Source: Styela clava (Eukaryota). From it: a DNA stretch of 64,000 nucleotides. Under the pieces are notes generated by a model that worked only from the letters and a program-made list of their open reading frames with translations, was not told the origin of the DNA and ran no database searches. Shown piece by piece: positions 4,024-55,400 of the stretch (position 1 is its first letter; the number at the start of each line of letters is the position of its first letter). The stretch covers positions 20,336,001 through 20,400,000 of the forward strand of contig NC_135255.1 in assembly GCF_964204865.1 (NCBI RefSeq), in the 5' to 3' direction. The translations under genes were made by a program, and so were the position numbers.

Positions 4024-5597
4024 ATTCTAACTAAGTAGTGAACCAGCAAATAATTTTGACATAAAATGCTGCCATGCTTATCATGTTCCTGATAAAAAAA
4101 AAAATTGCATTACTTATTTTTCACTAATAGCATTCGTCGGCAAATTCTAATCTTGCTAGCTGTGGTTGCTAAGTTTGCTGAAAAAGCAGTCGCTAAAAAT
4201 ACCAATTTTACTATTTTTAATTTCTTCTTCATATGCCTACTCTAACCATTTGTTCAATGTGTTAAATCTATCTATATTGTTTAACACATCAAATCCTAGG
4301 TACTTCAAACGATTATAGAAAATTAAAACACTTGGTCGGACAAAAAAACCACTCTGCCCAAACACTACGAAAATCTCATAAAAGTATAAACGATTTTTTC
4401 AATGTAATTTTGTATTTTAGGCTCCTTAGCAGGTAGTAATGGTCAGTGTGGTGGAAAAGAAATTAACATAACAGGAGGAAATGGTGTAATAAGTTCTCCA
4501 AATAATTCCAAAGAATATGGAAGAAGTGCAAACTGTTCATGGAATTTCACTCCTTCGGAAGATTACGCCCTCGTGTTAACAATCACGTATCAGAGGCTTT
4601 ATATAGTCACGCTAGGAAACATAAAGCTATGCTTGGGATCGTACAGTCTTACAATAAATAACGGTATGGGATATGAAAATACTTGGATTTACTGTTGAAA
4701 ATATAACTTGCTCTACAAAAAACAACGGTTAGAATGTAGATGACCTTGTTAACCTAACTCATGCTCTATTTCATTCATTAAGGAGTGGTTAGCTATTTAA
4801 CGATGATGTGATAAAAAATAATCATCAACACATACTCTGTAACGATCAGGCTTCCCATATGTATTGATGATTATTTTTTATCACGTCATACCCTAATAGT
4901 AGTGCTCTATGTCAGACTATATTGTAAATCGGGGAGCATTCCTGACTGCGAATTCTATTGCTCAATCGTGTGAAATACCATTTATTCAATTCAGATACAC
5001 AAGAATGTACGCGATACGTTGATGCTACATATTCAGGTTAGCTGATTGAACCCTTTGAATACTTCGACTCTATGTGCGGCAGCGATGCAGAGAATAATGT
5101 TCGCGTTCAGTATGTATCGGACGGACGCACATATAATGGTTCGGGAGCAGTGACAGGCACAATGGGTTTTAAAATTCAGTACAAGTTTCTACAATGTTCC
5201 ACAGTTATAGGTAAGTTTTGGATTTATTTCTGAACAATAAATATGAAATTTTTCTGTGGAAATGAAACTTCAAGTTTCAGTCATTATTAATTTGGCCTTT
5301 TGATTTTGAAGTATTCACTGACACAAGTCAGGAATCACAAAATAAGGCAGTTATATCAAATATAACGTTTGAAATTGGATAATTCCTTGTTTTCTAAGAA
5401 ACAACGACTGAATACGACCAACAAGCGAGTACCAATCCAGACAACAACCATTCCGTTTCTACCTCAAATGTAGCCCCGCACTCGACCGTTGCTACGATAA
5501 GTGCAACCGAGATTACACAGACCGATACAACAACGAAGTCCGCTATCACGGGTAAGCGTACAGATTAATTTCTCCTGACAGTTATTATATTCTATAA

Positions 5598-5779
5598 CAG
5601 GGGAGTGCAACTAGCTATACCTGAGCTTGTGCGAAGCTAGCAAGGTATGTCATAACATCAATTACCAACGTTTTTGTACCTGCAACTATTAGAAATCATA
5701 TATTGAATAAAGGTGCAGGTCGCGGTTTTGCCCAGATGTTTGTATTTGTCCCTCCTGTATTAAAGGTTGCACACCCCTG
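5598..5779. mobile_element. Short hAT-like MITE
   Basis: Ends CAGGGGAGTGCAAC...GTTGCACACCCCTG; flanks TTCTATAA/TTCTAAAA (8-bp TSD, 1 mismatch). Confidence 0.7.
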
Positions 5780-9562: not shown

Positions 9563-12500
9563 ATGGTTTCTTCGTTGATCGCCATCTTGATTTTAGGTAA
9601 GTAAAGCAAGTAACAATAATCAACTGTATTTTATATATACCGTATACGATAACAAACTACGACAGAAATTATTCTCAGATTTCTGATCAAAAATCTCGCA
9701 TTTCCCATATTTTATCGATAAATCTTAGTCCCGCTCAGCTCAAAAGAAAGTTACAAAAAAACTATTTGCGCGAAATATCAATTTAACAATGTTTTTATTT
9801 TTCTGCCATTTCAAGTGTTGAATCTATCCCAACCAAGGACACATTAAATCCCAGATACTTCGATTTGAAGTATTACTTTTCCAACTGCTGCCTACTCTTT
9901 CTCATATTATCGCATTTCCGTTACTGTCAAGAAAAATCATTTAATAGCACAACCTTATACAATAACCTCATTTTCCGTACTCTAGGCGCTGTATCCGGTG
10001 ACAACAGTCAATGTGATGGAGAAGAGATGAACATAACATCAGGAAACGGTGCAATAAGTTCTCCAAATTATCCCAAAGAATACGGAAGAAGTGCAAATTG
10101 CTCATGGAAATTCACTCCTTCGGAAGGTTACGCTCTCGTTTTGACAATCACATATCAGAGGCTTTATATTCTTGAAACTTCGGGAAAGCTATGCTTGGGA
10201 TCTTATGTTCTCTCCATAAACAATGGTTAGTATTACGCCAATATTAGTTGAGAATTTACAGAAGTTCTCTCGTATGAGTTGGGGTTGAACAATTTAGGAA
10301 AACCAAACAAGCTATGCTTGGGATTTTGTGTGCCTTTCCATAACCAATAGTAGTTAGTGAATATAGCGATATTTGAATTGAATGTAGAAAATTCACTAGC
10401 TTGGATTTGAATAAAATCTCACAATAAAGTGGTTTCCAATTTATTCTCAATACATTTGATTGATTGATTTTTTACCCTCGATTTATCAACTCTGAAAATG
10501 CTACGTAGTCTTATTCCTAAACATGTGCATGGCAAGGCCAGATTAGGCTTGCCACGATGGAGTGATAAAACGACGCTCCCGTAGTATGTGCACCAAGATG
10601 ACGAACATAGTTCGTGTACCAGGTTAGGATGAGGTCATAATTTTATTCCAATTTTCCTTATTTTAGTTCTATCACGAGTTCGGAGACTAGCCAAGTGACT
10701 CCCGTAGTATTTGTATCTGAAATTATGGCCTAATCCTAACCTGGTATACACACTTCGTTCCGGTATCCGCCATCTTGGTTCACATACTACGGGAGTACCG
10801 ATAAAACTATATTTGATGCACAGGAAGATACATGGATGGTATACGTGCCGCTACATTGATTGAAGTTTCCCATGTGAATCGGAAAACGAACCGATGATAG
10901 GAATCTGTTGGAATTGTCGATAAAACAGTAATCGACATCATAAAGGAATCGGCGGATATTTGCCAATGTTTCTGAATGTCATAAAAGTACTCATTCGAAA
11001 TAGCCTCTTTGCTTACTAGTATCGCGCAAAGGCAAAATAGTGTGTTCATTTTACAATGAATGTCAAAACGATAAAATTAAATTCAGATGCACAAGATTGC
11101 TCGAGATATTTAGATGCCAGATATTCATATACACTGACTAAACCTTTCGAATACTTCTGCGCTGGAGACGCAGGGAATAAATCGAGTGTTCATGTTCAGT
11201 ATATATCGGACGGGCGAACATATACTGGTTCGGAGAATGTGATTACAGCAGCAATGGGTTTCAGCATCCAATACAAGTTTTCACAATGTTCCACAGTTAC
11301 AGGTAAGTCTTGAACAATAAATATGAAATATTTCAATCAAAGTCACTAAACTTATTTATAATAAGTCTTCTTCAAACAAAGACGAGTAATCATGCACACG
11401 CATAAAGATTTTTGTGCATGGAATTATTTGAAAGAACGAATCTTCTCCATTCGGTGTTTCCAACTGATTTACATATTGATTTACACACGCGAACATTGAG
11501 TGTGCTAGATGTGGCAAGTGTTTGAAAGCGTAAGACAAAAAAATGACCCTTGATTCTAGTGAAAACCATTGGCTATTAGGAACGAAGTGTATAAGTGGAA
11601 AAATAAAACATAAATTATTCATTTTAATGCAGCACGCGCTCACCTGGATACAACTAATGCTCCTACTACCACACACTATCCGTCTTATCCCACTACTGAC
11701 GTAGTCAACACGGTTGAAATATTACCCAATACTGCAAATTTGGAAGTGGTTACTCGTATTAACGCTAAGACAACAGGTTTTAAAATCAGACCAGAAATAG
11801 GCATCACGTCGGATCGTTCAACAATCACCCCATCGCAAAATACTATGGGTAACTATGAATTTTGTATGTAATATTTAACCATCGGATGATGAAACCCATC
11901 CTGGGTAAAATTACCCCATTTTAGTACATGGTGTCGTTGCTTTTCTAAGTTTGTCCGAATATTCTTTTGCGTTCTATATTTAATCTGCTAATTGTTAGAT
12001 GACGTGCTGTGTACTGAGTGATCAGTTATGGACATTCAGTCTTTTTTTTCATCCCACTGCATAAAACTGCATTCGAAATTGATTGAGCGATTCAAAGGTT
12101 ACTATATACAGTACTTGTAACAGGAACAGTCAGCATATGCGCTGATAGACATTCGAGCACAAGTGGGATGAGTCAAACAACTCTAATTCTCCTCCTCTCC
12201 ATACCGGAATTTATCTTTGTTTTACTCATGATCGTGGCTGGGATTGCATTCTACAGAAAAAGACGGTCCGTATTATTTATGATTGGAATTATAAATCCTA
12301 ATCTTTATCCTAAAGCTTAATGATCCGATATTCATTTCATCGCCAACCGACACTAACAAAATATGAAACGATATGTGAATTCCTAAATTTTCTTAGAAAC
12401 CAAAACTGGTTACTGGGCAATGGCACACGGGATCAAAAAGTACTCAGGACAATTTATTTCATAAATTTGCAACAATGATGAATCTTCTCGTAGCCAGAGT

Positions 12501-14958: not shown

Positions 14959-14961
14959 ACG

Positions 14962-17683
14962 GGTCGTTGATCACCATCTTAATTTTAGGTGAGTAAACTT
15001 ACCAAATATCAATAATTAATTGTATTTTAACTAAGCAATAATCTAATAAACAACGTTGACATAAATTTCCTCCATACTTCTGATTAATAAACTTGTATTT
15101 CTCATATTTCATCAATAGCTTTCATCTCACTTTAGTAAAATTCGTCAGAAAACTAGTCGTAGGAAATAAAATACTGCAATATGATGTCAATACTAACCAA
15201 TCGTTCAAAGTTTTATGCCTATACTAATCGAAAAGACATATATTCTTATTTAAATCGAAAACCAAAGGATTCTGCCAAACCGAAACTATTACTATTCTTT
15301 CTACTATCGCATTCCCGTTACTGCTTAGAAAAACAGAATATAAAATTTTTTATTGTCATTTTTTGTCATCCAGGAACTGCAGTCGGTAGCCATGGTTAAT
15401 GTGATAGAAGTGATATGAACATAACATTAGGAAAAGGGCGAATTAAGTTCTCCAAATATTCTCAGAAATACGGAAAATCAGCAAATTGCTCATGGAAATT
15501 TATTCCTTCGGAAGGTTACGCTGTTGTGTTAACAATCACGTATAAGAGGCTTTATAATATTGCAAACTGGAACAAACTATGCTTGGGATCTTACAGGCTT
15601 ATGATAAAAAAACGGTAGGATGAATGAAAATTGTTTTGATCTCCTTCATCTGATCTTGGTCAATTATTTTAAGAGTTGAAAGATATTTACCCCCAAACAA
15701 ATATTTAAATTACATAACTTCAATATGCAATCTTTGTCATCACATCAAGGAGAAGTTAAGTAATATCTTAATTTGTACCTCTCCATGCCCGACGCTCTAG
15801 AAAACTAGAGCAAAATGACTGCGATACGCAAGAATGTACGAGATACAAACATCTTACTGCATTGATCGAACCTTTTGAATACTTCGACTCTATGTGTGGT
15901 GAAGACGCCGGAAATAAGCAAAGCGTTCATGTTCAGTATATATCGGACGGACGAACATATACCGGTTCGGGGACAGTGGCGACTTCTGTAAGGGGTTTCA
16001 GTATCCAGTATATACAAGTTTTCACAATGCCCCACAGTTACAGGTAAACATGCTAAATATTGTTCATTTATGAATTATATACATTTAAACAAAGAAAAGT
16101 AATAATGCACACTTATGATGATTTCCATGACCAATATAATAGATAGATTCAAATCATCTCCAGATTTTTTTTACTGATTTTGATTCCCAACAAGTGATGA
16201 GAAGTGCTTCATGTCACGTGATAGGAATAACTCTAAATCGAGTTTAACCTCGATTTTCTTGTGTGTGTGTTTCTTGTAACAATGTGTACAGGAAAGTAAA
16301 GCAGCATTTCATTTATTTTCATCATCATGCAGCAATCCCCTGCCCGAATACAACTAATGCTCCTATTACCACACAATATCCGGGTTATCCTACAACTGAC
16401 GAAGCCACCACGGGTGAAACTTTACGCTGTAAGGTGGGATCCGGACACTCATACATCCGATGAGACAACTGGGATCGAAAAAGGGAATGAATTAATCACA
16501 ACGTCTGACAAGTTAACATTGAAAACTACCATGGGTAGTACCAGCGGTAGAAATTTTTGAATGGGTGTGTGTAGTTGTTTGCATACTCAGTACGTTTTGT
16601 GTATGGCGTTTACTGTATTACTGATTAGTCGATCGCTAGATATTTTGAAGATTTTGGGCGATTGCAGCCAAAAGCAGGTTGGCCACCCCTGTTATACAAC
16701 GTTATGTATTTTCAACAGAAACAATCAATACAAACACTGATAGAATCTCAAGCACAAGCGGAATGAGTCAAACAACTCTAATTCTCCTCCTCTCCATACC
16801 CGAATTCATCTTCGTTTTACCCATGGTCGTGGGTGGGATTGTATTTTACATGAAAATACGGTGAGTATACTTCATGCTTAGAAATACAGCCGTATACCCA
16901 TTGAAATAACCGATAAATATTGTATTTTATATTCAGGTATTGTGCCCACTATTAATTAAACAAATCATCCTAAACTTCAAGCTAAATATTATAGATTTAC
17001 TCAACTGCCACATTGACGACATTCGTGTCCTATGAAAATATTCTAAGGACTACCTTTATAGATGAAGCTGATGTGATATTATATATTATTATTATTTTAG
17101 ATCACAACGTTCAGACCATGCCAGCACAGCACAAGGGACTGTTTTACTAATTCTACTGAGATCGGAAACATCAGTTCTACGGGACAAAACGAAACGTCAT
17201 CTGGTGATGTGAGATATGCTAGGAAGCTGAACTTTCTTCGCTATAACGTTTTAAAAACTGGGGTTTTATTGATGTTTTAGATTTTCAACGCTTGTTATTG
17301 TCGTCATTTAGGCGTCATTGGAACAAATCTCGTAATATTAGTTTGTTTTCCGTTCTAGTGTACATGTTTCTGATTTCAGCAATGTCCGCGTATATTTCGC
17401 ATTTTGAACTCATTCTAACCGACGTAAATAACTGATGTAATATTAATTGATGTTTCCGAAAAAGTAAGGTACTAAGCAAAAACATTCCTATCTTAATACA
17501 GAGGTAATAGGATTCATGATATATATTCAGATACCGATGGCTACGGAGAAGTTCAAGCTGGGCCCTCTGGTGGATATGAAGAGATACAACCAGCAACTAA
17601 TGAATACGAGAAAGTGCAAATAAGGGCAAATAACTCACAAACAAGACGCCGGATATAAAGCCACGTATATGAACGTTGCATAA
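14962..17683 (+). pseudogene. Gene 3: class A CUB receptor pseudogene
   Basis: Signal exon remnant 14962-14988 lacks ATG; in-frame TAA at 15397-15399 in CUB exon 1; CUB exon 2 acceptor deleted (~15823); frameshifts in CUB exon 2 and the tail exons. TM exon 16719-16860 still reads LLLSIPEFIFVL. Confidence 0.88.
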
Positions 17684-21581: not shown

Positions 21582-24500
21582 ATGATTTGGTCGTTGATCG
21601 CCATCTTGATTCTAGGTAAAGTTATATAAGTGTTACTAATTAATTATATTCTAACTTAGCAATAAACAAACAAACAACTTTGACAGAAATTTATTCTATA
21701 TCTCGGATAGATAAACTTTTATTTCTTATTAATAGTCAACCAGTAATCATTTTTCCTCTCATTCTTATTTCGGAGCTCCAAAAGTATGTGCACCAAGATG
21801 GCGCACAACCTGAACATAGTATGTGTGTACCGGTTTGGATTCAGGTTGTGTGACATCTTGATGCACATACTTCTGGAGAACCATCATTTCATTTATAGCT
21901 TTCGTCGAAATTTGGAAAAATCTGTCAGAAAACAATTCGTACGAAATAAAATAATGTACTATGATGCTAATCATTTGTTCAAAGTGTTATGCCTATACTA
22001 ATCCAGAACACATCAAATCTTATTAAAATAGAAAACTGAAGGCTTACTCCTGACCATTCTACTATCGCATTCCCGTTACTGCCATGAAAAATTTCCTGAT
22101 AGCATATACAATTATCTCATTGTCATTTTCTGAATCCTAGGCGCTGTAGCCCGTGGCAATGGTCAATGTCATGGAGAGGCGATGAGCATAACATCAGAAA
22201 ACGGCGAAATAGATTCTCCGGATTATGATAACGAATACGGAAAATCAGCAAATTGCTCATGGAAATTCACTCCTGCGGAAGGTTACGCTCTTGTGTTAAC
22301 AATCACGTATCAGAGGCTTTATATTCTTGACATAACGAGCAACAATAATCCAAAAAAATATTGTTTGGGATCGTACAACCTCACTATAAACAACGGTTGG
22401 TATCATATTATTAGAAAATAGTTTTAAAAGATCGATTCCCTGTACGACATATGCCAATTCCGATTTTTCTTGGGGGCGTTTAGGTCACTCGAGATTTCGA
22501 ATTTACTAATATCGATGTGGTGAAGCGTCCACCTTGCTTTAGGCATTGGTGAATATAATTGAATTAAAAGAACGTCTTGGGGTAATTGGTTTGATCGCAT
22601 AGAAGTATTTCGCAAAGTGATTTGCTATTTTACCTTGCGCATGACAAAACTGAAAGAATTTTATTCAGATACTCAGGAATGTAGGAGATACATTGATACC
22701 AGATATTCTACTACAATGCCCTTTCAATATTTCGACACGATGTGCGGTGAAGACAAAGAAAATAAATCAAGTGTTCATGTTCAGTATATATCTGATGGAC
22801 GAACATATAACGGTACTGAAAAAGTGCAAACCGTATCAATGGGTTTCAGAATTCATTACAAGTTTTTAGAATGTCCCACGACTGCTGGTAAATATTGATG
22901 AAAACATAGACAAACCGTAAATTAAGCTTTTATCCTTTTAACTATACATAAAATTTCTTCGACTTTGATGAGTACCTCGCTTTGCGTAAGAATTGTAATT
23001 TCGAAACTAATATGAAAATGCATACATTTTTTTATTCGAATGAAGACGAATCCGCAATTATACAAAAATAGCAGTTTCAAGCAATTACCTTAAAAAATAT
23101 ACTTCACCTTGATATAATCCTTTTCTTAGAAACAACAACTGATCATGTCCTAACAAGTATTTTGGAAGGAAGCTCCTACATAGAACAAACAGGTACCACC
23201 TTTGAGGACAACCGTACTCTTTCTACTAAAGGTAAGTAGGTACCCCATGGACGTTTGCTGCAATGCGTACAATCAAGACTACACAGGCTCTGGCAACAAT
23301 AAAAACTTCCATTTTTATTGTAATGATTTTGTTAATTACATCAGGTAAATTAAATATCGCGAAAATCAAAACCTTGGTAAGTCAGGATTGGAAAAGCCAT
23401 TATTTTTTAACAATGTTTGTCAGGCTATGGTTCACAATTTAGGACAGAATTCGACTGCAATGAAAATCGTAAAAGATCCCAATAGATTTATCACATTACG
23501 GGTCAGTTGGCGCATGATATCGTAATTCAAAAATTTATTATCAATATTTAATTGCGTTGGTAAATTGTTTTCTTAAGTTTTATTAAAAATGGAACCAACC
23601 ATAAACCATACAATGATGGTGTCGGGTTTCAAAACCAATACAAGCCACTTTATTAATGTTATTATAACAGACACAGAAAACAATGACGTTGGAACTTTCA
23701 GCGAAACTGACGGCGCCAACTCACATGGAATAAGTGATACTGCAAAGCTTTTCCTCGTTTCTATCCCAGGATTCATTGGCATTATATTACTTGCGGTGAC
23801 TGCAATCGTATTCTGCAGAAAGAGAATGTAATTAACTCTTATTGAGTACTTCCTTGATTAGCCAATAAATATTTGTCTTGGTTATATACGTAAAGAAATA
23901 CCAACTGGTCAAATGAAGCGTAAGCTAAACGGATATATTGCATGGGTGCAATGACCTAGTGGGGATGGCGTCGGACTGTAAGAGTCGTTGATATTATATT
24001 TCATATACAACCGTACACCAGCCATCTAGTAACTTATACATTCGCAATCGCGAATCATTATTATTATCGTGACTGCCTGTCGGGAACCTTGTTCATAGGA
24101 AAGTCTAAAAACGCCTATAGCGGCAGAATTCATCCAAGATAGGATTATATGAAATCGTTGTATACGGTCAAGTCGAATATGATTAAAACAACAAAATATA
24201 GGTCCCGAATATCATCGTAATAATATAAGAATATTTGTTAACAGGGACAAATATCAAGAAAACAAAAATGTCGAACAAGACAATGTAGGCGGAAATAAGA
24301 TGGAAAATGCTGAATCTCCAATCAAAGAATCGGACCAAGACACTGCTGCAGGTAAGAACTTATTTAATGGATCTTAATACGAGAACACATTCCAGGTTGA
24401 CTAAAATCTTATATCTAAAACTTGCTCTTTTATTTTAAAAACGTTTCACTCTCGAAAGGAAGCATAGAGTACAAAAAACTAAGCTTTATAAGCCTTGAAC

Positions 24501-28000: not shown

Positions 28001-28125
28001 GGAGATGTTTATATCTGAATCATCCGGTTTTTTAAAATCTAATCTCTCAAATTAATGCGGGCCATTATGATACTGTTGGGTTTTCTTGTTTCTTTACCAG
28101 GAAGAAAATGATTAGTCTAGTTAAC

Positions 28126-35200: not shown

Positions 35201-35223
35201 GATTGTGGAATGAAAAAACCCAC
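29086..35223 (+). repeat. Direct duplication with ~3.45-kb offset (29086-31750 vs 32531-35223)
   Basis: Near-identical sequence, also visible as duplicated spurious ORFs (29534/32984, 31020/34493, 31125/34598). Confidence 0.9.
31933..33361 (+). pseudogene. Gene 6: signal-exon-less CUB cassette with orphan class B tail exons
   Basis: Open CUB exons 31933-32172 and 32421-32642; first Cys changed to Tyr (CAG TAC). I found no signal exon between gene 5 and 31933, and no stalk exon. Tail exons at 32960-33044 and 33255-33361. Confidence 0.7.
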
Positions 35224-35798: not shown

Positions 35799-38690
35799 AT
35801 GGTTTGGTCATTGATCGCCATCTTGCTTTTAGGTGAGTAAAGTACGGAATTGAATTAATAATAATTTATCGTATTATTACCAATAAAAAAACGAATTCCG
35901 TAGACAGAAATTGCTTTCAGGTTTATCATGTTTGTAGTCGGGAAATTGGTATTCATTGTATTTCATGGATAAATCTAAGCCCTACCTGGGATTGTGTATT
36001 TTGCTAAAATATCTTCACCACCATACATTGGAATTTTCACCATTTCTGCGTCATTTGGTTTCGTATTTGAACAAAACAAGAACATTGAATTCTATTTACC
36101 AACAAGACGTTTGCCTCAATCAGTTGGTCACGAAATTTTTGTATATGTTGCATTTCTCTATATGTTGGAAACTGTGGCCTATTGCAATGGTCAGTGTGCC
36201 GGAGAGGAGATGAACATAACATCAGGAGACGGCGTAATAAGTTCCCCAAATAATCGCGACAAATACGTAAAATCAGCAATCTGCTCATGGAATTTCACTT
36301 CTTCGGAAGGTTACGCTTTCGAGTTAACAATCACGTACCAGAGGCTTTATATTATTGAAAACTCAAACAAGCTGTGCTTAGGATCGTACAGCATCACTAT
36401 AAACAACGGTTTGTGAAATAACTGTAAATTATCATTTTCTGATCTAATTAAATCATGCTCTATTTTAGTTTGTTAGAATTTTTCGATATTTAAACATCGG
36501 TGTATATTTTTTATCATATCGACGGGAAAGGGTGATAACTTAGTTTCTAACGTTTCTTGTCCGACTCTAGCCGACGAGGTCAGGAATCAAATCAGGATCA
36601 AAAATGATGTGTTATACTATTAAAATTCAGATACACAAGAATGTACGAGATACGTTAATGCAAAATATTCAATTTCATTGATTGGATCATTTGAATATTT
36701 CGATTCTATGTGCTGTGGAGAAGCAGGAAACGGAGCAAGTGTCCGTATTCAGTATATATCAGATGGACGAACATATACCGGTTCTAACACAGTGATAACC
36801 ATCATATGGGTTTCAGAATCCAGAAGTTATCACAATGCCCCGGATTTACAGGTAAACACGCTAAATATTGTTTATCTATGAATAGGGCGGGGCGTTTTCG
36901 AATACCCGATGATTTCAGAATCGAATCTCAAATACTTGGAAGATATGAAATTGTATGTAACTTTCTTACTATTTTAGGTCATCCAGACACATAAATTACT
37001 AAAAACATAGATAACATCACTAACAATAAAAAACACATTTTCATCAATACCCCAATACAGAAAAAGTTCGAAAATTTTCTCTAAACCGATTCGAATAAGT
37101 TACTATTCGATTCGGATATTCGATTCAAAATGCCCAGCCTTATCTATGAATTATATACGTTTTCTAAACAATGCATATTAATAATGCACACTTATGATAA
37201 TTTTTAAGACCGAACTAATGGAGAGATTCAAATCATCTCAAGACATTTTTTACTGATTTAGTTTCACAAAAAGTGATGAGAAGTTCTTTGTGTCACGTCA
37301 TAGAAATAACCTCATTTCAAGTTTTGCCTTTGATTCCTGTTAAAACTAATACCAATCCGGTACAAGGTGTGCAGGAAATAAATCAGTATCATTTATTTTC
37401 ATTTTAGCAATCATCTACCCCGATACAACTAATGCTCCTACTACCACACAATATCCGGTTCATCATACTACTGACGCAGCCACTACGGTTGAAACATTAC
37501 GCAATACTGCAAAGTCGGATCCGAACACTCATACAACCCCTGAGACAACTGGGATCGAAAACGCGAATGAATTAATCACAACGTCTGACAAGTCCACATT
37601 GAAAACTACCAAGGGTAAGTGTTCGAGTTTTGTCATTTCATCACTGGACTGTAAGATAAAAATACCAGTACATATAATTTAAAACCAATTAAATTATCAT
37701 GCATATACTTGGTATTGCCATTTTTTTTAATCCGCGAGATGGTGTGCTATCTACTACGTGGACGTTTTTGAATTGATGAACATTTTCACTTGTTATACAC
37801 ATTATTTATTTTCACCAGGAACAATCAACACAAACATTGATCGAACAACTTTAATCGTCCTCCTCTCCATACCAGAATTTATCTTCGTTTTACTCATGGT
37901 CGTGGCCGGGATTGTATTCTACAAGAAAAAAACGGTGAGCATTCTTCATGCTCAGAAAAATAACCGTATACCACATTGAACTAACCAATAAATATTGTAT
38001 TATTTTATTTCCCGATAAAATCATTACGTTCTCTGTTATTTCATGACATGACGATGCGTGTTTGCAATCGGCACCGGATTCTCGATGTTTTTGTTTTGTT
38101 GATTTGATGTTATATACTTAATTTTGTCAAAGATCCCAACGTCCGGAACATGCCAACGCAGCACAAGGGACTGTTCCTAATTCTACTGAGATGGGAAACA
38201 TCGGTTCTACGGGGCACAACGGAACGTCAGGTAACCTATTTGTATTTTCAAATGCAGCATTGAGATATGATAGAAAGTTACACTTTCTTTGCTGAAACAT
38301 TTTAAAAAATGGGGTTTCATTGTTATTTTTGGTTTTCAGCGCTTGTCATTTGAATACTAGTTTGTTTTTCGTCTTAGAGTACATGTTTTTGATTTCAGCA
38401 ATGTCCGGCGTATATTTCGCATTTTTAACTGACGTGAATAACTGATTTAATATCAATTGATGTTTCTGGAATAGTAAGGTACTAGATTAAAACATAACTA
38501 TCTTAATACAAAGCTAATGAAATTCAGAACATATTCAGATACCGATGGCTACGAAGAAGTTCAAGCTGCGCCATCTAGCGGATATGAGGAGATACGACAA
38601 GCAACCGATGGATACGAAAAAGTGCAAATAAGGGCAGCAACTCAGGAACAAGAGGCCGGATATAAAGCCACGTATGCGAACATTGCATGA
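35799..38690 (+). pseudogene. Gene 7: class A CUB receptor, probable pseudogene
   Basis: Signal exon 35799-35832; CUB exon 1 (to 36408) has its acceptor AG changed to GG at ~36167; CUB exon 2 36631-36851 is 221 nt (frameshift); stalk 37408-37614; TM 37819-37934 with an extra A in a homopolymer; tail exons 38133-38230 and 38539-38690 intact. Confidence 0.8.
36883..37142. mobile_element. hAT-like MITE in intron 3 of gene 7
   Basis: Ends TAGGGCGGGGCGTTTT...AAAATGCCCAGCCTTA; perfect 8-bp TSD TCTATGAA (36875-36882, 37143-37150). Confidence 0.82.
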
Positions 38691-41025: not shown

Positions 41026-44000
41026 ATGGTTTGGTCGTTGATTGCCATCTTTATTTTAGGTGAGTTAAGTTACCAACTATTAATAATTAATTGTATTCTA
41101 ACTAAGCAATAAACTAACAAACAACGTTGACACAAATCGCTTCCATGCTTCTCATATTTCTGTGTAGAAAGTTTGCATTTCTCACATTTCATCAAAAGCT
41201 TTTGTCAATAAATTTTAGTTATACTGAAATAGTGTAATTTGTCAAAATAAATCCATCGCTAAGCATTGAATATTTTACTCCATATGGTATTGTATTAAAC
41301 TAACCGAAAGGATATCTCTGAATTCTATCCACCTATGAGAATTATGCCCCAAAACAGTTTAACCACTCCCGTCGCAAAAACGTTTTGACATTGTACTTTT
41401 CCACTTCCTAGGAACTGTAGTCGTCAGCAATGGTCAGTGTGATGAAAAGGATATGAACATAACATCAGGAAACGGCGAAATAAGTTCTCCAAATAATCTG
41501 AACGAATACGGGAGAACAGCAAATTGCTCGTGGAATTTCACTCCTTCGGAAGGTTACGCTCTCGTGTTAACAATCACGTATCAAAGGCTTTATATAGTCG
41601 CTCCACCAGGCAGGAAGATATGTTTGGGATCGTATGTGCTCTCCATAAACAACGGTTAGTTGATATAGGAATCTGAACTTACTGTAGAAAAATTCAGTAG
41701 CTTGGATTTAAATAAAATCTAATAATAAAATTGGTTTCTAATTCATTTTAAGTACATTTGCTAAGGTAGATTTATTCTTTACTTTAAATTCCTTAACTCT
41801 GAAACTGCTACGTAGTCTTATACCTATACGTGGGTATGGCAGGCCAGATTCTGCTTGCCACGATAAAACTAAATTTGATGCACAGGAAGAAAATGGATGG
41901 TACATGTGCCGCTGCTTTTAGTGAAGTATTCTCTGTGAATCGGAAAGCGAATCGATAGGTTGGAATAGTCGATAAAACAGTAATCGACATTATACAGGAA
42001 TCGGCCGATATTGCCAATGTTTCTGAATGTCATAAAAGTACTCATTCGAAATAGCCTCTTCTGCTTACCAGTATCGCGCGATGGCAAAATGATGTGTTCA
42101 TTTTACAATGATTGTCATCATGATAAAATTTAATTCAGATGCACAAGATTGTTGGAGATATTTAGATGCCAAGTATTCACATGCACTGACTAACCCTTTC
42201 GAATATTTCTGCGCTGGAGACGCAAGGAATAAATCGAGTGTTCATGTTCAGTATATATCGGACGGGCGAACATATACTGGTTCGGAGAATGTGATTACAG
42301 CAGCAATGGGTTTCAGCATCCAATACAAGTTTTCACAATGTTCCACAGTTACAGGTAAGTCTTGAACAATAAATATGAAATATTTCAATCAAAGTCACTA
42401 AACTTATTTATATAAGTTCTTTAAACGAAGACGAGTAATCATGCACACGCATAAAGATTTTTGTGCATGGAATTATTTGAAAGAACGAATCTTCTCCATT
42501 CGGTGTTTCCTACTGATTTACATATTGATTTACACTCGCGAACATTGAGTGTGCTAGATGTGGCAAGTGTTTGAAAGCGTAAGACAAAAAATGACCCTTG
42601 ATTCTAGTGAAAACCATTGGCTATTAGAAACGAAGTGTATAAGTGGAAAAATACAACATAAATTATTCATTTTAATGCAGCACGCGCTCACCTGGATACA
42701 ACTAATGCTCCTACTACCACACACTATCCGTCTTATCCCACCACTGACGTAGTCAACACGGTTAAAATATCACCCAATACTGCAAATTTGGAAGTGGTTA
42801 CTCGTATTAACGCTAAGACAACAGGTTTTAAAATCAGACCAGAAATAGGCATCACGTCGGATCGTTCAACAATCACCCTATCGCAAAATACTATGGGTAA
42901 CTATGAATTTTGTACGTAATATTTAACCATCGGATGATAAAACCCATCCTGGGTAAAAATATCCCATTTTAGTACATGGTGTCGTTGCTTTTCTAAGTTT
43001 GTCCGAATATTCTTTTGCGTTCTATATTTAATCTGCTAATTGTTAGATGACGTGCTGTGTACTGAGTGATCAGTTATGGACATTCAGTCTTTTTTTTCAT
43101 CCCACTGCATAAAACTGCATTCGAAATTGATTGAGCGATTCAAAGGTTACTATATACAGTACTTGTAACAGGAACAGTCAGCATATGCGCTGATAGACAT
43201 TCGAGCACAAGTGGGATGAGTCAAACAACTCTAATACTCCTCCTCTCCATACCGGAATTTATCTTTGTTTTACTCATGATCGTGGCTGGGATTGCATTCT
43301 ACAGAAAAAGACGGTCCGTATTATTTATCATTGGAATTATAAATCCTAATCTATCCTAAAGCTTAATGATCCGATATTTATTTCTTCGCCAACCGATACT
43401 AACAAAATATGAAACGATATGTGAATTCCTAAATTTTCTTAGAAACCAAAACTGGTTACTGGGCAATGGCACACGGGATCAAAAAGTACTCAGGACAAGA
43501 TATTTCATAAATTTGCAACAATGATGAATCTTCTCGTAGCCAGAGTGTGTGTTAGTTACGTTATAATTTTTTCATGAACGTACTAATTAATCATGAAGTA
43601 TGATCTTAGAAAAGGCGTGGGTCACGCTTTATGAATCGTAGGTACGTGACGCACGACTAATAAAACTAGTAGTCGAGTTACGTCTTCAATTCAATATTAC
43701 ACTTTTCAGAACAACAATATTAGTACTACATACATGGATTAACCTAGGTATAGTTAGAATGTTTTTGATGAGGGTTGGTATTACAATTATTTACATCCTC
43801 TGTACGCGGTGCTGTAATCTCTGTCCAAAATTAAACAAATCATCCTAAACTTCGAGCGCTTGTAAACTTGCTACTCCTCCCACATTGTCGACATTTGTAT
43901 CTTATAAAAATATTTTAAGGACCCCCCTAAAGACGAATCTGATGTGATTTAATATACCCAATATTTTCAAAGATCACAGCGCTCAGACCATGTCAACACA

Positions 44001-51570: not shown

Positions 51571-52497
51571 GAATGAGAAATATTTAAATCCGAATAAAAA
51601 AAATAGGAAGTTTTTAAAGCAAACGTTGTTTTCTCGAAATATATAGTAAAAATGCGACTAAACAGGTTTATTTTGTCACGATGGTAATCAAGAATTTTGA
51701 GTTTGTAAAGTGCAGACAGTACAGTCTGAGTCGATGATTGCGACGAACATACTTTTATTATAGAGGCGCCAGATTGACGTCCCGTGGAGAGTCCGCTTGT
51801 GTGCCAAATGTGGTACGCGCGCCACGGGCCACAAACCTGAATTGAGAAATTATATATCTGGGTTGCACAAGCTAATTATTGTTTTGTTACATTTCAACAA
51901 CGAAAACATGACCAGAGCAGTTCTGGTCCAATCAATCGGACGTTTTCAGATTGAAAATATAAACGATTTGATTAGTTTGACTCTTATACCTACCTTCAAA
52001 AATAATTCGGGGATATACAAATTAAATATGCTGTTATACATGAAAATGAATAAATTAAAGGTGCAGTGTAGTGTGAGTAAAACCAATCGGAGTAACACCG
52101 AAGTAAAACATAATCAATTACTTAATTGGTTATGCACGCATGACACTGCCGTCATAGCATAGAAAGCGCCATCAACTGTGCTAAATCACGCAATGACCAG
52201 ACGAGCACACTGACGGAAAGGGCATGCAGCCATTGCTTGCTTACCTACCATCACCATAATCAGTCAGTCACACAACGTACTGCCCTTATGGCCCTCTCCT
52301 AGTTACAATATAAGTATTGTTCCTGGGAGACAGTCAGAGATGTAGGATTGGATCATGGGAATGTTTATATCGAATATCGTTTTGCATAATACAAATTTTT
52401 GTCGTAATTACCGTAATTTGGATCAAATATTTTTAATATTACGTCCACTTTGCTTTTCTTCTTACTAACTAAGACGTAAAACATTAGTCTAGTTACC

Positions 52498-55400
52498 ATG
52501 ATTTGGTTATTGATCGTTATCTTACTTTTAGGTGAGTAAAGTAAGCTACACTTGTTAAACAACAAATTTTATTTTACGTGCAATAAGCGAACGACGTAAA
52601 CAAAAATTGCTTTTATGCCGCTCTAATGTCTGATCAACAAAAACATATAACCAATTTACCTACGATCTATGTTTCAAAGCAGTTGATCAAATATAAGGAT
52701 CGTTCAGGCGCCAAGCAGTTTGATCTTTGTCATTTCTGCTTTCTAGGAACAGTAGCCGGTAGCAATGGTCAGTGTGATGGAAAGAAGATGAACTTAACAT
52801 TAGGAAATGGTATAATAAGTTCTCCAAATTATCCCGAGGAATACGGAAAATCAGCAAACTGCGCATGGGATTTCAATCCTTTGGAAGGTTATACTCTCGA
52901 ATTAACAATCACGTATCAAAGACTTTATATATCTGTAACAGAAACAAGCGTGAAGATTTGCTTGGGGTCTTACCTTCTTTCCATAAGTAACGGTTAGTGA
53001 AATAACAATAATTTAAATAAAAAAAGTTTTCTCTGTAGAAGTTGTACGATCCAAGATTTTATTTTGATTCAGCTTAACCCTGGGACCCCAGGAAAGCATA
53101 TTCATTCTTGATTTCGTGGTAATAGTTATCGAAACTTTACTATTCCACTTATTTCTCACTTTTAATCAAATGTGGGCAGTATTAAATATTATATATATAT
53201 ATAATACGGTGAGATGTACGTTGGTGTAAAGTATTCATATTAATTAAACCAATTTAAATCAACGTGTGGCGGAAACATAGTTCAGCCGCTGCCAAATAAA
53301 AAAATACTTGAACGGAAAGTACAGTCACCATTATATATTATGTATAACAAAATTTAAAGTGATAAAATTCAATTCAGATACTCAGGAATGTAGCAGATAT
53401 ATTGATAAAAACTATCTCATGACATTGATTGGAGTTCAGCATTTTGACTATTTCGACTCTATGTGTGGCGAGAACGCAGAAAATAAGCCAAGTGTTCATG
53501 TTCAGTATATGTCAGATGGACGAATATATACCGGTACTAATACAGTGATAACCAAATCAATGGGATTTAGTATCCAGTACAAGTTTTCAGAATGCTACAC
53601 GACTGCCGGTAATTAATCTTTGCAACTACATAAAATTACTTTGATGAATATCCTGAATTGTAATTTCGAAACCACGATATAAATACGTACCAATTTTTTT
53701 TTTATTTGAATGAAGACATATCCGAAACTAAAAAAAATGCAGTATTAAGCAATTGATTGCATTACCAAATATACTCAACCTTGGTAAAATCATTTTCTCA
53801 GAAACAACAACTGAATATGTCCAAACGAGTATTTTTGAAGGAAGCTCTAACATAGAACAAACAATTACGAATTTTGAGGACAACCGTACTCTTTCTACTA
53901 TAGGTCAGTAGGTTTCTCATAAACGTTTGCTACGAAAACATCAATCGAAACTAGACAACTACCCAACAAAAAAGCCTTTTATTTCTAGTACAAAAGGTGA
54001 ACCTGTTGATAACATGAAGTTGATTAAATATCGCGGAACTTCGAAACCTTGGGAGTTCAGGATTGGAAAATCATTATTTAACAATCATTATCTATGTTTT
54101 ATATTTTAGGCCTGAATTAGTCAGCAACAAAAATTGATATGTCTTCTAATAAATTAATTAAACCCTGGCCCTGGGTTAGGTGGCCAATATGGGGGTTGAT
54201 ATCAAGGTTCGTCATCTATTGGTACAGGGTTTTATTAACAAGGAAGATTAAATATAAAACAGATTATGAATCAAATAATTTATTTATCGGGAAATGATGT
54301 ATCAACCCGAAGCACTTGGGATTATTTTACAAGCTATTAAAGTTTATGTAAATAAACATAGAAGTTTCGCATTTCTTTATTGTTCCATGTCATGCTAAAA
54401 CAAGAAAAAAATCATAAAAAAATCTTTATATTTTTTTTTCGAAATCGTGCACTGACTCTAACAAAACCGATGTGATTAAAGCAGTTTTACTATTGAGTTT
54501 GTTATAAGAAAACTCATACTGAATCAATGGCCGTGTCGTACTACAAAACTAATATGAGCCCCCTTAGCAATATTATTCCTTATTACAATACTAATATCAT
54601 CACCTCTAGCACTCTTATTTCCTATTATATCAGACACAGCTGGAGAAACTGATGGCGCCAATTCAGATGGAATAGGTGACACTGCAAAGCTTTTCCTCGT
54701 TTCTATCTCTGGATTTATTGGTATCATAATACTTGTGGCGACTGTAATCGTATTCTGCAGGAAGAGAGGGTATTTAACTCATACTGATTACTTCCTTGAT
54801 TAGCAATTAATTATTTGTCTTGGTTATTTACGTATAGAAATACCTATAGGTCAAAAGAAGCCTAAGCAAAACGGATATATTGCATGGGTGTAATGACCTA
54901 GTGGTTATGGCGTCGGACTGTAATCGCCGTTGATATGACATCTCATATACAACCGTACACAAGCCATCTAGTAACTTGGACAGACAATCCCGAATCATTA
55001 TTATTATCGTGACTGCTTACTTAAAGCCGTGTTCGCAGTGAAAGTCCAAAAACGACTACAACGGCTGCATTCATCCAAGATAGGATTTTATGAAAGCGTT
55101 GTATAAGGTCAAGTCGAATATAATTAAAAGAAGAAAATATAATTCTTGAATATCATCGTGATAATATATGAATATTTATTAACAGGGACATATATCAAAA
55201 AAACAAAAATGTCAAACAGGACAATGTAGGCGGAAATAAGATGGAAAATGCTGAATCTCCAATCCAAGAACCGGACCAAGACACTGCTACGGGTAAGAAT
55301 TTATTAAATAGATCGTGATACGGGAACACATCCCAGGTTGACTAAAATCTTATATCTGAAACTTCCTCTTTAATTTTGAAAACGTTTCACTCTCGAAAGG

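What the first reader, a model, noticed from the sequence alone, without database searches (positions are those of the whole stretch)
4421..53608. Three hypervariable, length-polymorphic loops in a conserved CUB framework
Seen: between YQRLYI and CLGSY the copies read VTLGNIKL, LETSGKL, LDITSNNNPKKY, VENKEKR, VKNAEKI, IENSNKL, VAPPGRKI, SVTETSVKI. After RY.D they read e.g. ARYSYTLTKPF, TRYSTTMPF, TAYPLTVIKPI, TRYALAVIEIF, KNYLMTLIGVQHF. After SDGR.Y they read TGSENVITAA, NGTEKVQTVS, TGSGATTTG, TGTNTVITKS. The framework (SANCSW.F, GYALVLTITYQRLY, VHVQY.SDGR, MGF.IQYKF) is nearly fixed and indels in intact copies are in-frame. Inference: a CDR-like ligand-binding surface under diversifying selection.
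Basis: partly seen in the sequence, partly recalled or inferred. Interest (0 to 1): 0.8.

Follow-up and report, generated by a model that had tools for sequence, protein, structure and literature searches.

The report
Variable loops in sea-squirt CUB receptors
Nine neighbouring sea-squirt (Styela clava) genes encode small surface receptors with one CUB domain whose loops differ strongly between copies; two of the three reported loops are the ones other CUB proteins use to bind ligands, but selection for diversity is only hinted at.

Summary
The window (Styela clava, C6:20.336-20.400 Mb) carries nine tandem + strand paralogues, six of them intact in the CUB exons. Each encodes signal peptide, one CUB domain split over two exons, Ser/Thr stalk, TM helix and tyrosine-motif tail. 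The three loops are the three highest entropy peaks of the domain: pairwise identity is 29/40/51% against 75% in the framework. They are not the only variable parts: the N-terminus, the 'YPKE' loop and a fourth loop also vary.

The fold is CUB (hhalign 98.7%; AF2 pLDDT 74; Z 9.7 to MASP-2 CUB2). Loop 1 corresponds to CUB loop L5 and loop 3 to an enlarged L9, the canonical Ca2+/ligand-binding tip. Loop 2 is a family-specific insertion in L6 and is inferred to lie at the opposite end. One three-loop face is therefore unlikely.

Loops evolve at omega about 1 (0.96; framework 0.34), not significantly above 1. Loop 1 is simply about 3x faster at all sites. Site models support a small omega about 3 class (p about 0.001), not confined to the loops and exposed to demonstrable gene conversion. 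The scan had already noted this unnamed, apparently species-restricted family on other DNA.

The parts
4444..4662 (+). copy c1, CUB N-half (exon 2 from Gln of 'QC' to the last full codon); loop 1 at 4606-4629, VTLGNIKL
   Evidence: donor AAC|GGTATG
4997..5209 (+). copy c1, CUB C-half (exon 3); loop 2 at 5024-5056 holds an in-frame stop (ATYSG*LIEPF), so this is a pseudogene; loop 3 at 5135-5161
9564..9597 (+). copy c2, exon 1: ATG plus signal-peptide start (MVSSLIAILIL, phase 1)
   Evidence: sequence read; identical to the N-terminus of NCBI model P0159
10009..10224 (+). copy c2, CUB N-half; loop 1 at 10171-10191, LETSGKL; YPKE loop at 10066-10089
   Evidence: Pfam CUB 35.3 bits; a 270-nt contig of run X6 joins this exon to exon 3
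11089..11301 (+). copy c2, CUB C-half; loop 2 at 11116-11148, ARYSYTLTKPF; fourth loop at 11161-11187; loop 3 at 11224-11253, TGSENVITAA
   Evidence: contig of run X6 covers 10092-10224 and 11086-11222 with 0 mismatches
11634..11848 (+). copy c2, Ser/Thr/Pro-rich stalk exon
   Evidence: sequence; matches P0159 residues about 166-237
12124..12266 (+). copy c2, transmembrane exon (…TTLILLLSIPEFIFVLLMIVAGIAFYRKRR)
   Evidence: P0159; helix 253-288 in the AF2 model
15397..15612 (+). copy c3, CUB N-half, pseudogene: stop in place of Gln1 and a shifted donor; loop 1 at 15559-15579, IANWNKL
15826..16011 (+). copy c3, CUB C-half, pseudogene: acceptor AG lost and a frameshift after 'SIQY'
22164..22394 (+). 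copy c4, CUB N-half; longest loop 1 at 22326-22361, LDITSNNNPKKY
   Evidence: NCBI models P0151 and P0062
22671..22886 (+). copy c4, CUB C-half; loop 2 at 22698-22724, TRYSTTMPF; loop 3 at 22809-22838, NGTEKVQTVS
28514..28753 (+). copy c5, CUB N-half; 8-aa (24-nt) tandem duplication in the YPKE loop at 28571-28618; loop 1 at 28700-28720, VENKEKR
28981..29196 (+). copy c5, CUB C-half; loop 2 at 29008-29040; loop 3 at 29122-29148, TGSGATTTG
31956..32171 (+). copy c6, CUB N-half (first Cys replaced, 'QY'); loop 1 at 32118-32138, VKNAEKI
   Evidence: NCBI model P0058, 166 aa, CUB only
32423..32641 (+). copy c6, CUB C-half; loop 2 at 32450-32482, TRYALAVIEIF; loop 3 at 32567-32593
   Evidence: this is the protein folded
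36192..36407 (+). copy c7, CUB N-half; loop 1 at 36354-36374, IENSNKL
36633..36818 (+). copy c7, CUB C-half, frameshift inside or after loop 3 (…TGSNTVITIIWVSE), so this is a pseudogene
41435..41653 (+). copy c8, CUB N-half; loop 1 at 41597-41620, VAPPGRKI
   Evidence: NCBI model P0160
42141..42353 (+). copy c8, CUB C-half, 96% identical to c2 exon 3 (gene-conversion or duplication tract); loop 2 at 42168-42200; loop 3 at 42276-42305
52770..52991 (+). copy c9, CUB N-half; loop 1 at 52932-52958, SVTETSVKI
   Evidence: NCBI model P0161
53380..53607 (+). copy c9, CUB C-half; longest loop 2 at 53407-53445, KNYLMTLIGVQHF; loop 3 at 53530-53559, TGTNTVITKS

Best explanation
The window is the core of a roughly 190-kb tandem cluster in Styela clava with about 25 copies. 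The cluster encodes a lineage-restricted family of type I single-pass receptors, plus a few truncated CUB-only copies and several pseudogenes. Their only ectodomain is a divergent CUB beta-sandwich.

The family grows by tandem duplication, gene loss and gene conversion. The beta-strands and the six cysteines are held by purifying selection (omega about 0.3). The connecting loops are almost free to change (omega about 1) and to gain or lose residues.

It is a beta-hairpin that replaces CUB loop L5. This is the place where canonical CUB domains hold Ca2+ and grip a basic side chain of their ligand.

The Asp53-equivalent is Ser in every copy and the Glu45-equivalent varies. I therefore infer that the tip has become a Ca2+-independent recognition surface that is specific to each paralogue. 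Each copy would then couple a different binding specificity to one of two tyrosine-motif tails.

Loop 2 is a family-specific insertion in L6. An extra disulfide ties it to the C-terminus, and it probably lies at the membrane-proximal end. It is likely not part of that surface.

Shown: gene models, CUB fold, loop mapping, the rate difference and gene conversion. Inferred: the three-dimensional position of the loops, loss of Ca2+ binding, a ligand-binding role and any selection for diversity.
For: - Species and gene models: NCBI Styela clava 'uncharacterized' proteins are identical to my exon reading.
- Transcription: a spliced exon 2-exon 3 contig exists in run X6.
- Cluster size and subfamilies.
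- CUB assignment:
  - Pfam 21.8-34.2 bits against a cut-off of 21.4.
  - hhalign of the family against 300 canonical CUB domains gives 98.7%, E = 3.7e-15, 110 columns.
  - The AF2 model has pLDDT 74.4 and pTM 0.72.
  - All top Foldseek hits are CUB with probability 1.0.
  - VIA-align gives Z 9.7 and rmsd 3.0 A over 113 residues, and the top 50 are all CUB.
- The role of Glu45, Tyr52, Asp53, Asp98 and Ser100 comes from PMC4222235.
- Rates:
  - Omega is 0.96 for the loops and 0.34 for the rest (p = 6e-15), with per-loop values of 1.53, 0.86 and 0.73.
  - The B subfamily replicate gives 1.73 against 0.41.
  - M2a, M8 and M8a tests give p = 0.003, 5e-5 and 7e-4, with high-posterior codons in L1 (three), the YPKE loop, C-x-RY and L2.
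  - The signal survives removal of gapped columns.
  - Seven null simulations gave 2dlnL of at most 0.06.
- Gene conversion: the c2/c8 tract shows a divergence gradient.
Against: - No ligand, no expression site and no binding data exist.
- Omega about 1 is what unconstrained loops give without any selection for diversity.
- Loop 1 has raised synonymous as well as non-synonymous divergence. A model with its own rate of 2.9x and omega 0.53 fits better. That points to indel turnover or misalignment.
- The omega > 1 class is not confined to the tip loops. It is still present at p = 0.009 after all three loops are removed.
- The site tests assume no recombination and a uniform dS, and both assumptions are violated here.
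- Old and new annotation alleles show 0 of 8 differences in the CUB domain for one gene. For another, 2 of 9 fall in the CUB domain and none in the loops.
- The three-dimensional placement of the loops is topological inference. The tools return no coordinates, and the loop 2 region of the model has pLDDT of only 57-62.
Confidence: 0.5

Rival explanations
1. Relaxed constraint only. This would be a young family with fast turnover in which surface loops of a beta-sandwich drift neutrally and slip by indels. The paralogues would be functionally redundant or decaying. No selection for diversity and no paralogue-specific binding surface would be involved.
For: - Loop omega of 0.96 is not different from 1 (p = 0.77).
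- NG86 loop values are 0.37-0.71.
- Loop 1 is 2.9x faster at all sites, with omega 0.53.
- Variable segments lie at both ends of the sandwich: N-terminus, L4, the L6 insertion and the C-terminus.
- 3 of 9 window copies and 2 further neighbours are pseudogenes.
- The framework omega of 0.30-0.34 is itself high.
- The c2/c8 exon 3 comparison gives 6 non-synonymous to 2 synonymous changes, about neutral.
Against: - M8 beats M8a (p = 7e-4). The result is robust to removing gapped columns and is not produced in null simulations.
- B-subfamily loops reject omega = 1 under a shared dS (p = 0.008).
- Intact copies keep canonical splice sites, all cysteines and open frames through length-variable loops.
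- The peak of variability coincides with the canonical CUB binding loop L5.
Confidence: 0.33
2. All three loops would form one contiguous CDR-like paratope under diversifying selection.
For: - The three loops are the three highest entropy peaks.
- High-posterior omega > 1 codons occur in loop 1 (three) and loop 2 (one).
- B-subfamily NG86 gives L2 1.62 and L3 1.42.
Against: - Loop 2 is an insertion into CUB L6, between 'iyDG' and 'llgryCG'.
- It is flanked by Cys91, which pairs by position with the C-terminal Cys156, and by the strand that runs up to the L5/L7 disulfide.
- Ten coil residues cannot reach the opposite end and return.
- Loop 3 has no codon with P > 0.5 in the intact set.
- No region-wise omega is significantly above 1 in the window's subfamily.
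Confidence: 0.1
3. The apparent hypervariability and the omega > 1 signal would be artefacts. The causes would be misaligned length-variable loops and mosaic histories produced by gene conversion between tandem copies.
For: - Exon 2 and exon 3 trees disagree, and c2/c8 are 96% identical in exon 3 but 83% in exon 2.
- Loop 1 has pS 0.63-0.68 against 0.41 in the framework.
Against: - The amino-acid differences are visible without any alignment, between fixed anchors (YQRLYI…CLGSY).
- The M8 signal persists with all gapped columns and their neighbours removed (p = 2e-4).
- Separate trees per exon were used.
Confidence: 0.07

Closest known systems
Ca2+-binding CUB domains of C1r/C1s, MASPs, cubilin, PCPE-1 and neuropilins (Pfam PF00431)
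   Same: - Same fold: Z 8-9.7 and rmsd about 3 A over 101-115 residues.
- Same N-terminal signature (G.I.SPNYP..Y…C.W).
- Same two canonical disulfide positions.
- 'SD' and 'GF.I.Y' C-terminal motifs are kept.
- The most variable loops, L5 and L9, are the loops that form the ligand site in these proteins (PMC4222235).
   Different: - Pfam sees only profile positions 1-45/65 of 110.
- The Asp53-equivalent is Ser in all copies and the Glu45-equivalent is variable.
- L5 is a 7-12-residue hairpin.
- L9 is about 9 residues longer.
- There is a 15-residue insertion in L6 with an extra disulfide.
- The L7/beta8 region is about 5 residues shorter.
- The layout is a single CUB on a mucin-like stalk with a TM helix and a tyrosine-motif tail, in a tandem multigene cluster.
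Spermadhesins (single-CUB secreted proteins, e.g. PSP-I/PSP-II, aSFP)
   Same: Stand-alone single CUB domains encoded by a small clustered gene family. Structural matches are 1spp (Z 7.7) and 1sfp (Foldseek E = 1.3e-3). The truncated copies c5 and c6 would be CUB-only proteins.
   Different: Spermadhesins are soluble mammalian seminal-plasma proteins without a stalk, TM helix or tail. They lack the L6 insertion and the extra disulfide.
Clustered paired innate receptors with variable ectodomains (KIR/LILR, Ly49; in the styelid Botryllus the Fester/FcoR families, PMC12582321)
   Same: - Tandem birth-and-death cluster.
- One small ectodomain joined to alternative ITIM-like (IMYSAL) or YEEV/YEEI/YVNV tails.
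- Gene conversion or exon exchange between copies.
- Gene-content difference between assemblies.
   Different: - The ectodomain is CUB, not Ig or a C-type lectin.
- No polymorphism, ligand or immune-cell expression has been shown.
- The few allelic comparisons show no loop hypervariability.
- There is no sequence relationship to Fester/FcoR, which are Ig/sushi proteins according to the abstract read.
CUB-containing single-pass signalling proteins (CDCP1, DCBLD1/2, NETO1/2)
   Same: A CUB ectodomain on a type I membrane protein. CDCP1 and DCBLD proteins have tyrosine motifs in the tail (this statement is from my own knowledge). A NETO2 CUB domain is among the structural matches.
   Different: Those are conserved single-copy vertebrate genes with several ectodomain modules. 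They are not tandem multigene families with variable loops.

Membership tests
CUB domain (PF00431) | Match to the Pfam CUB model above the gathering score | tested here: met
   The exon 2 peptide of c2 scores 35.3 bits against 21.4. Full proteins of subfamily A score 21.8-34.2 bits. P0066, the B member P0071 and the C5 member P0104 score 18.9-20.8 bits, just below the cut-off. Only profile positions 1-45/65 of 110 are aligned.
CUB domain (PF00431) | Homology over the whole domain, including the C-terminal half | tested here: met
   hhalign of the family profile against 300 canonical CUB domains cut from hits gives probability 98.7%, E = 3.7e-15 and 110 aligned columns. Global mode was used. 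The local-mode run was lost when timed out.
CUB domain (PF00431) | Ten-stranded beta-sandwich superposable on solved CUB structures | tested here: met
   The AF2 model of P0058 has pLDDT 74.4. Top Foldseek hits are C1r, C1s and MASP CUB2 and a spermadhesin, all with probability 1.0. VIA-align gives Z 9.7, and the top 50 are all CUB.
CUB domain (PF00431) | Four conserved cysteines (C1-C2, C3-C4) | tested here: met
   QC…ANC and KxC…MCG/FCAG are present in all intact copies, except that c6 has QY in place of QC. Two extra cysteines (QEC…QC) are invariant in the family. The disulfide pairing itself is inferred.
Ca2+-binding CUB subset (cbCUB) | Acidic triad equivalent to C1s Glu45, Asp53 and Asp98, plus a Tyr | tested here: not met
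   The Asp53 position is Ser/Asn ('CLGSY', 'CSGNY') in every copy. The Glu45 position falls in variable loop 1 (E, D, T, A or K). The Asp98 position ('SDG') is kept in subfamily A and is E or K in B. The Tyr of 'EYG' is kept. Residue roles come from PMC4222235.
CDR-like hypervariable binding surface | Variability concentrated in loops of a conserved framework | tested here: met
   Pairwise identity is 29, 40 and 51% in the three loops against 75% in the framework. They are the top three entropy peaks. The partition LRT gives p = 6e-15.
CDR-like hypervariable binding surface | The variable loops are contiguous on one face | tested here: inconclusive
   Loops 1 and 3 correspond to L5 and L9, which share one Ca2+ ion in canonical CUB domains and are therefore adjacent (PMC4222235). 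Loop 2 is an L6 insertion and is inferred to lie at the opposite end. No coordinates are available to measure distances.
CDR-like hypervariable binding surface | dN/dS above 1 in the loops | tested here: not met
   - Subfamily A: NG86 0.37, 0.58 and 0.71. ML pooled 0.96. L1 is 1.53 (p = 0.045) but 0.53 with its own rate.
- Subfamily B: 1.73 under a shared dS (p = 0.008) and 1.14 with local dS.
- A small omega about 3 site class is supported.
Paired activating/inhibitory immune-type receptor cluster | Tandem cluster of one ectodomain type with alternative inhibitory and activating tails | tested here: inconclusive
   The cluster is confirmed. Two tail classes are visible in the protein models: YEEV/YEEI/YVNV against IMYSAL/DMYSAV. 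Motif function was not tested, and the tails were not the subject of this finding.
Paired activating/inhibitory immune-type receptor cluster | Expression on immune or allorecognition cells, and polymorphism | not testable with these tools
   There is one spliced contig from an unlabelled run. Two-haplotype comparisons show few CUB differences. One old-annotation paralogue is absent from this assembly.

The most novel reading that the evidence does not exclude
The L5/L9 tip of a CUB domain has lost its Ca2+ site and been turned into a germline-diversified, paralogue-specific recognition surface. Coupled to ITIM-like or YEEI/YVNV-type tails, it would form a natural-killer-like paired receptor system in a solitary sea squirt, built on a scaffold never seen in that role. 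The system might serve immune recognition or the recognition of other individuals of the same species.
Probability: 0.2. Interest if true: 0.8.

Novelty: new variant of a known kind. Interest (0 to 1): 0.5.

Why it matters
Variable-receptor families in invertebrates and protochordates have so far been built on Ig, lectin, LRR, fibrinogen or sushi domains. A tandem family that varies the classical ligand-binding tip of a CUB domain would add a new scaffold to that list. Tunicates are the closest living relatives of vertebrates, and styelid ascidians are a main model for allorecognition.

The family also gives concrete hypotheses for experiment. The loop 1 hairpin and the enlarged L9 can be swapped between paralogues to test binding. 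The finding corrects the 'three CDR' picture as well. Two of the loops are plausibly one surface. The third is a separate, family-specific insertion.

If the loops merely drift, the family is an ordinary lineage-specific expansion.

Tried and rejected
- **First AF2 job.** Full-length P0159 with 14 rows gave pLDDT 40.6 and no Foldseek match. I discarded it. A second job used the 166-aa CUB-only protein with 36 rows, including exon-level rows, and that one worked.
- **HMMER against PDB sequences.** The family profile aligned only the first about 45 residues. I therefore built a canonical CUB profile in the sandbox for hhalign.
- **Deepening the alignment with multi-CUB proteins.** MAFFT timed out and I abandoned this.
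- **The large profile search.** It was swamped by multi-CUB giants. Only 10 single-domain, full-coverage hits appeared, all from S. clava. It therefore cannot prove absence in other species.
- **Word searches.** They found only S. clava proteins.
- **Reads.** The best DNA holder is identical in the c2 exons and may be the assembly's own sample, so there is no independent population data. Variants at 10073 and 10077 look like cross-mapping from c8. The runs guessed to be RNA give one clean spliced contig only.
- **Literature.** I looked for the L5/L9 nomenclature paper (Gaboriaud 2011). It is not in the library, so I used PMC4222235 for residue roles. The loop numbering is from my own knowledge.
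- **Homology to Botryllus Fester/FcoR.** I considered and rejected this, because those are Ig/sushi proteins.
- **Joined exons.** Codon analyses were run exon by exon with separate trees and summed likelihoods. Full-length proteins were taken only as returned database records.

Full report
**What is there**

The window is eukaryotic, 35% G+C, with no N runs. On the + strand it holds nine copies of a two-exon unit that encodes the two halves of one CUB domain. For copy 2 I read the whole gene from the sequence:
- exon 1 with the ATG and the start of the signal peptide (9564-9597);
- exon 2 (9986-10225, phase 1);
- exon 3 (11087-11304);
- a Ser/Thr/Pro stalk exon (11634-11848);
- a transmembrane exon (12124-12266);
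- tail exons.

NCBI's models for Styela clava were returned by the protein searches. They have exactly these junctions (…SINN-D-AQDC…; …CSTVT-A-RAHL…) and are all named 'uncharacterized protein'. The contig length in those records equals that of G000:C6, so the species is confirmed. A 270-nt contig of a public run joins 10092-10224 to 11086-11222 without a mismatch, which shows that copy 2 is transcribed and spliced as modelled.

The window is G000:C6:20336001-20400000. The family has about 25 copies between 20.218 and 20.408 Mb, plus a few on C5 and C17. It falls into the window's subfamily A (14 copies), a subfamily B (5 copies) and some outliers.

In the window, c2, c4, c5, c6, c8 and c9 are intact in both CUB exons with canonical G|GT and CAG| sites. 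c1 has a stop inside loop 2. c3 has a stop, a lost acceptor and a frameshift. c7 has a frameshift.

**The observation**

| Segment | Mean pairwise identity among the nine copies |
|---|---|
| Loop 1 | 29% |
| Loop 2 | 40% |
| Loop 3 | 51% |
| Remaining columns | 75% |

Loop lengths range over 7-12, 9-13 and 8-10 residues. The three loops are the three highest peaks of a sliding entropy window, at 2.33, 1.66 and 1.44 bits.

They are followed closely by other segments:
- the N-terminal stretch after 'QC' (1.38 bits);
- a fourth loop, 'GEDAGNKSS' (1.19 bits, small indels);
- the 'YPKE' loop (36% identity), which carries a 24-nt tandem duplication in c5 and in a copy outside the window.

So 'three' is a ranking rather than a sharp class. 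The extra two segments have omega 0.64, significantly above the framework (p = 4e-5).

**The fold and the identity of the loops**

- Pfam's CUB model matches above its cut-off, but only over profile positions 1-45/65 of 110.
- HMMER against PDB sequences likewise aligns only the first about 45 residues.
- I therefore cut 300 canonical CUB domains out of the multi-CUB proteins returned by the large search. I aligned them and compared the family profile with theirs. hhalign (run in global mode) gives 98.7% probability, E = 3.7e-15 and 110 columns over the whole domain.
- A first AlphaFold model was useless (pLDDT 40.6).
- A second model, of the 166-residue product of copy 6 with 36 alignment rows, reached pLDDT 74.4 and pTM 0.72.
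- Its best Foldseek matches are all CUB domains with probability 1.0.
- VIA-align gives Z 9.7 and rmsd 3.0 A over 113 residues to MASP-2 CUB2, and the top 50 entries are all CUB.

In the profile alignment the three loops map as follows.
- **Loop 1** occupies the canonical segment 'dLE.s..C..D'.
- **Loop 3** follows the canonical 'SD' and is about 9 residues longer than usual.
- **Loop 2** is a roughly 15-residue insertion between 'iyDG' and 'llgryCG'.

The spacing of the conserved E, D and SD.S in the canonical consensus fits the C1s numbering Glu45, Asp53, Asp98 and Ser100. According to PMC4222235 these residues hold the Ca2+ ion and contact the ligand's lysine.

Loops 1 and 3 are therefore CUB loops L5 and L9 (nomenclature from my own knowledge of Gaboriaud et al. 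2011). These two loops share one metal ion in canonical CUB domains, so they must be neighbours in space.

In the family:
- the Asp53 position is Ser or Asn in all copies;
- the Glu45 position lies in the variable loop;
- only the 'SD' Asp is kept, and only in subfamily A.

The canonical Ca2+ site is thus degenerate.

In the model, loop 1 is a beta-hairpin (strands 68-70 and 73-75) with good confidence. Loop 3 is a confident coil. The loop 2 region has pLDDT of only 57-62.

**Where loop 2 sits**

The tools return no coordinates, so this is inference.
- Strands of the sandwich alternate direction. L3, L5, L7 and L9 are therefore at one end, and L4, L6, L8 and both termini are at the other.
- Loop 2 lies in L6.
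- It begins just after a family-specific Cys (QEC). The only free partner for that Cys is the Cys right after the last strand (KFSxC).
- It ends at the strand that runs up to the Cys bonded to the base of loop 1.
- About ten coil residues cannot reach the far end and come back.

I conclude that loop 2 is at the membrane-proximal end, away from loops 1 and 3. The tip then carries loop 1, loop 3, the YPKE loop (L3) and the start of the fourth segment.

**Selection**

Each exon had its own codon alignment and ML tree, and likelihoods were summed with shared parameters.

Region-wise results for subfamily A:

| Estimate | Loop 1 | Loop 2 | Loop 3 | Loops pooled | Framework |
|---|---|---|---|---|---|
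| NG86 pooled dN/dS | 0.37 | 0.58 | 0.71 | 0.60 | 0.27-0.30 |
| ML partition omega | 1.53 | 0.86 | 0.73 | 0.96 | 0.34 |

- dS is about 0.6-0.8 overall.
- The ML loop/framework difference has p = 6e-15, and the pooled loop omega is not different from 1 (p = 0.77).
- Loop 1's omega of 1.53 differs from 1 at p = 0.045.
- When loop 1 is given its own rate it is 2.9 times faster, with omega 0.53, and that model fits better (2dlnL = 8.75). Its excess is in synonymous change as well. This points to indel turnover, misalignment or mosaicism rather than clean positive selection.

Site models do support a small class with omega above 1:
- M1a against M2a: 2dlnL = 11.5, p = 0.003, with 4% of codons at omega 4.4.
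- M7 against M8: 2dlnL = 19.9, p = 5e-5.
- M8a against M8: 2dlnL = 10.3, p = 7e-4.

Codons with posterior above 0.8 in the intact set are:
- the three core positions of loop 1 (in c2: 10174-10182);
- the second residue of YPKE (10072-10074);
- the residue after the QEC cysteine (11101-11103);
- one mid-loop-2 position (11128-11130).

None lies in loop 3.

The signal is robust in some respects and not confined to the loops:
- It survives removal of all gapped columns and their neighbours (p = 7e-4 and 2e-4).
- It also survives removal of loop 1 (p = 0.010) and of all three loops (p = 0.009).
- Seven data sets simulated under M8a gave 2dlnL of at most 0.06, so the pipeline is not grossly liberal.

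In the less diverged subfamily B, outside the window:

| Estimate | Loop 1 | Loop 2 | Loop 3 | Loops pooled | Framework |
|---|---|---|---|---|---|
| ML, shared dS | 2.71 | 1.16 | 1.68 | 1.73 (omega = 1 rejected, p = 0.008) | 0.41 |
| NG86, local dS | 0.84 | 1.62 | 1.42 | 1.14 | 0.37 |

All these tests assume no recombination. That assumption fails here.
- The exon 2 and exon 3 trees disagree.
- c2 and c8 share a tract whose divergence falls from 10.8% in intron 2 to 0.7% in the TM exon.
- Within that tract, exon 3 differs by 6 non-synonymous and 2 synonymous changes. All six are in or beside loop 2 and the fourth loop.

**Polymorphism**

Proteins of the older annotation, from another assembly, can be compared with the present ones.
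- One subfamily A gene differs at 8 residues, none in the CUB domain.
- An outlier gene differs at 9 residues, 2 of them in the CUB domain and none in the loops.
- One B gene differs at 33 residues, including three consecutive residues of loop 1 and an indel in the YPKE loop.

One older protein (P0066, 330 aa, intact) has no match above 70% anywhere in this genome. Gene content therefore differs between haplotypes. The read data added no independent individuals.

**Comparison with known systems and novelty**

The fold and the position of the main variable loops are those of ligand-binding CUB domains. The following features are not described for CUB proteins in the library I could search:
- the lost Ca2+ ligands;
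- the L6 insertion with its extra disulfide;
- the hairpin L5;
- the single-CUB-stalk-TM-tyrosine-tail layout;
- the tandem birth-and-death cluster.

Both protein searches returned only S. clava relatives. The limits of the top-150 list and of the word index apply.

The architecture resembles paired innate receptor clusters, including the Ig-based Fester/FcoR families of the related Botryllus (PMC12582321), but there is no homology to them.

Earlier notes of this scan had already described the family on other windows. Those notes gave me the species lead, which I then verified.

**Verdict**

Loops 1 and 3 plausibly form a variable tip at the classical CUB binding site. Loop 2 is probably elsewhere. 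Diversifying selection is suggested by site models, but region-wise dN/dS does not show it.

Noticed in passing
window 58145-62272 (- strand): An uninterrupted 1375-aa gag-pol ORF of a Ty3/gypsy-type retroelement, with zinc knuckle, protease, RT, RNase H and integrase motifs readable in the translation. It sits between sequence resembling the upstream region of a family gene (56761-57738) and its continuation (62724-62910). It therefore appears inserted just upstream of the next family gene. Observed only.
   Followed up: no
window 10576-10800 (intron 2 of copy c2): A short inverted-repeat (MITE-like) element. The arms 10576-10643 and 10720-10795 are 78% complementary. In public runs it reaches a depth of about 5e5 against about 30 for the flanks, so it is a very high-copy repeat of this genome.
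   Followed up: partly
window 10799-13700 versus 41861-44760: Copies c2 and c8 share their 3' part (exon 3 to the tail), with divergence falling from 10.8% to 0.7% along the tract. Their exon 2 is only 83% identical and loop 1 is unrelated. This is a gene-conversion or exon-exchange mosaic.
   Followed up: yes
protein P0066 (XP_039255197.1, old annotation of LOC120332060): An intact 330-aa family member from the earlier S. clava annotation has no match above 70% identity in this assembly. The same LOC number now names copy c2, which is 58% identical. Gene content of the cluster differs between haplotypes or individuals.
   Followed up: partly
window 28571-28618 (c5) and G000:C6:20265503-20265748 (- strand): A 24-nt tandem duplication of the 'YP.EY..' unit lengthens CUB loop L3 by 8 residues in two copies that are not sisters in either exon tree.
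   Followed up: partly
window 22671-22886 (c4 exon 3); proteins P0151 and P0062: NCBI isoform X2 of copy c4 uses a donor inside exon 3 (…SDGRTYN|ETTT…). This removes loop 3 and the last beta-strand, so the isoform could not form a complete CUB fold. It may be an annotation artefact or a real splice form.
   Followed up: no
window 28400-36000: Copies c5 and c6 are only about 3.4 kb apart and have no room for stalk, TM or tail exons. Both read through the exon 3 donor to a stop (…EGKHIEY*, …EGKHIDN*). They are CUB-only genes. c6 also lacks the first cysteine, and its NCBI model has no signal peptide. Nearly identical 107-aa ORFs at 31020-31343 and 34493-34816 (- strand) mark the duplicated unit.
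   Followed up: partly
proteins P0159/P0160 versus P0161/P0151/P0079 (window genes c2, c8 versus c9, c4): There are two tail classes. The first has YEEV, YEEI, YEKV and YVNV motifs with a Glu in the TM helix (SIPEFIF). The second has IMYSAL and DMYSAV motifs with Gly at that TM position (SIPGFIG).
   Followed up: partly
loop 3 start, e.g. window 22809-22817 (c4) and 5135-5143 (c1): The first residues of loop 3 alternate between TGS/TGT and NGS/NGT. An N-glycosylation sequon at the start of the L9 loop is therefore present in some copies (c1, c4, m3) and absent in others.
   Followed up: no
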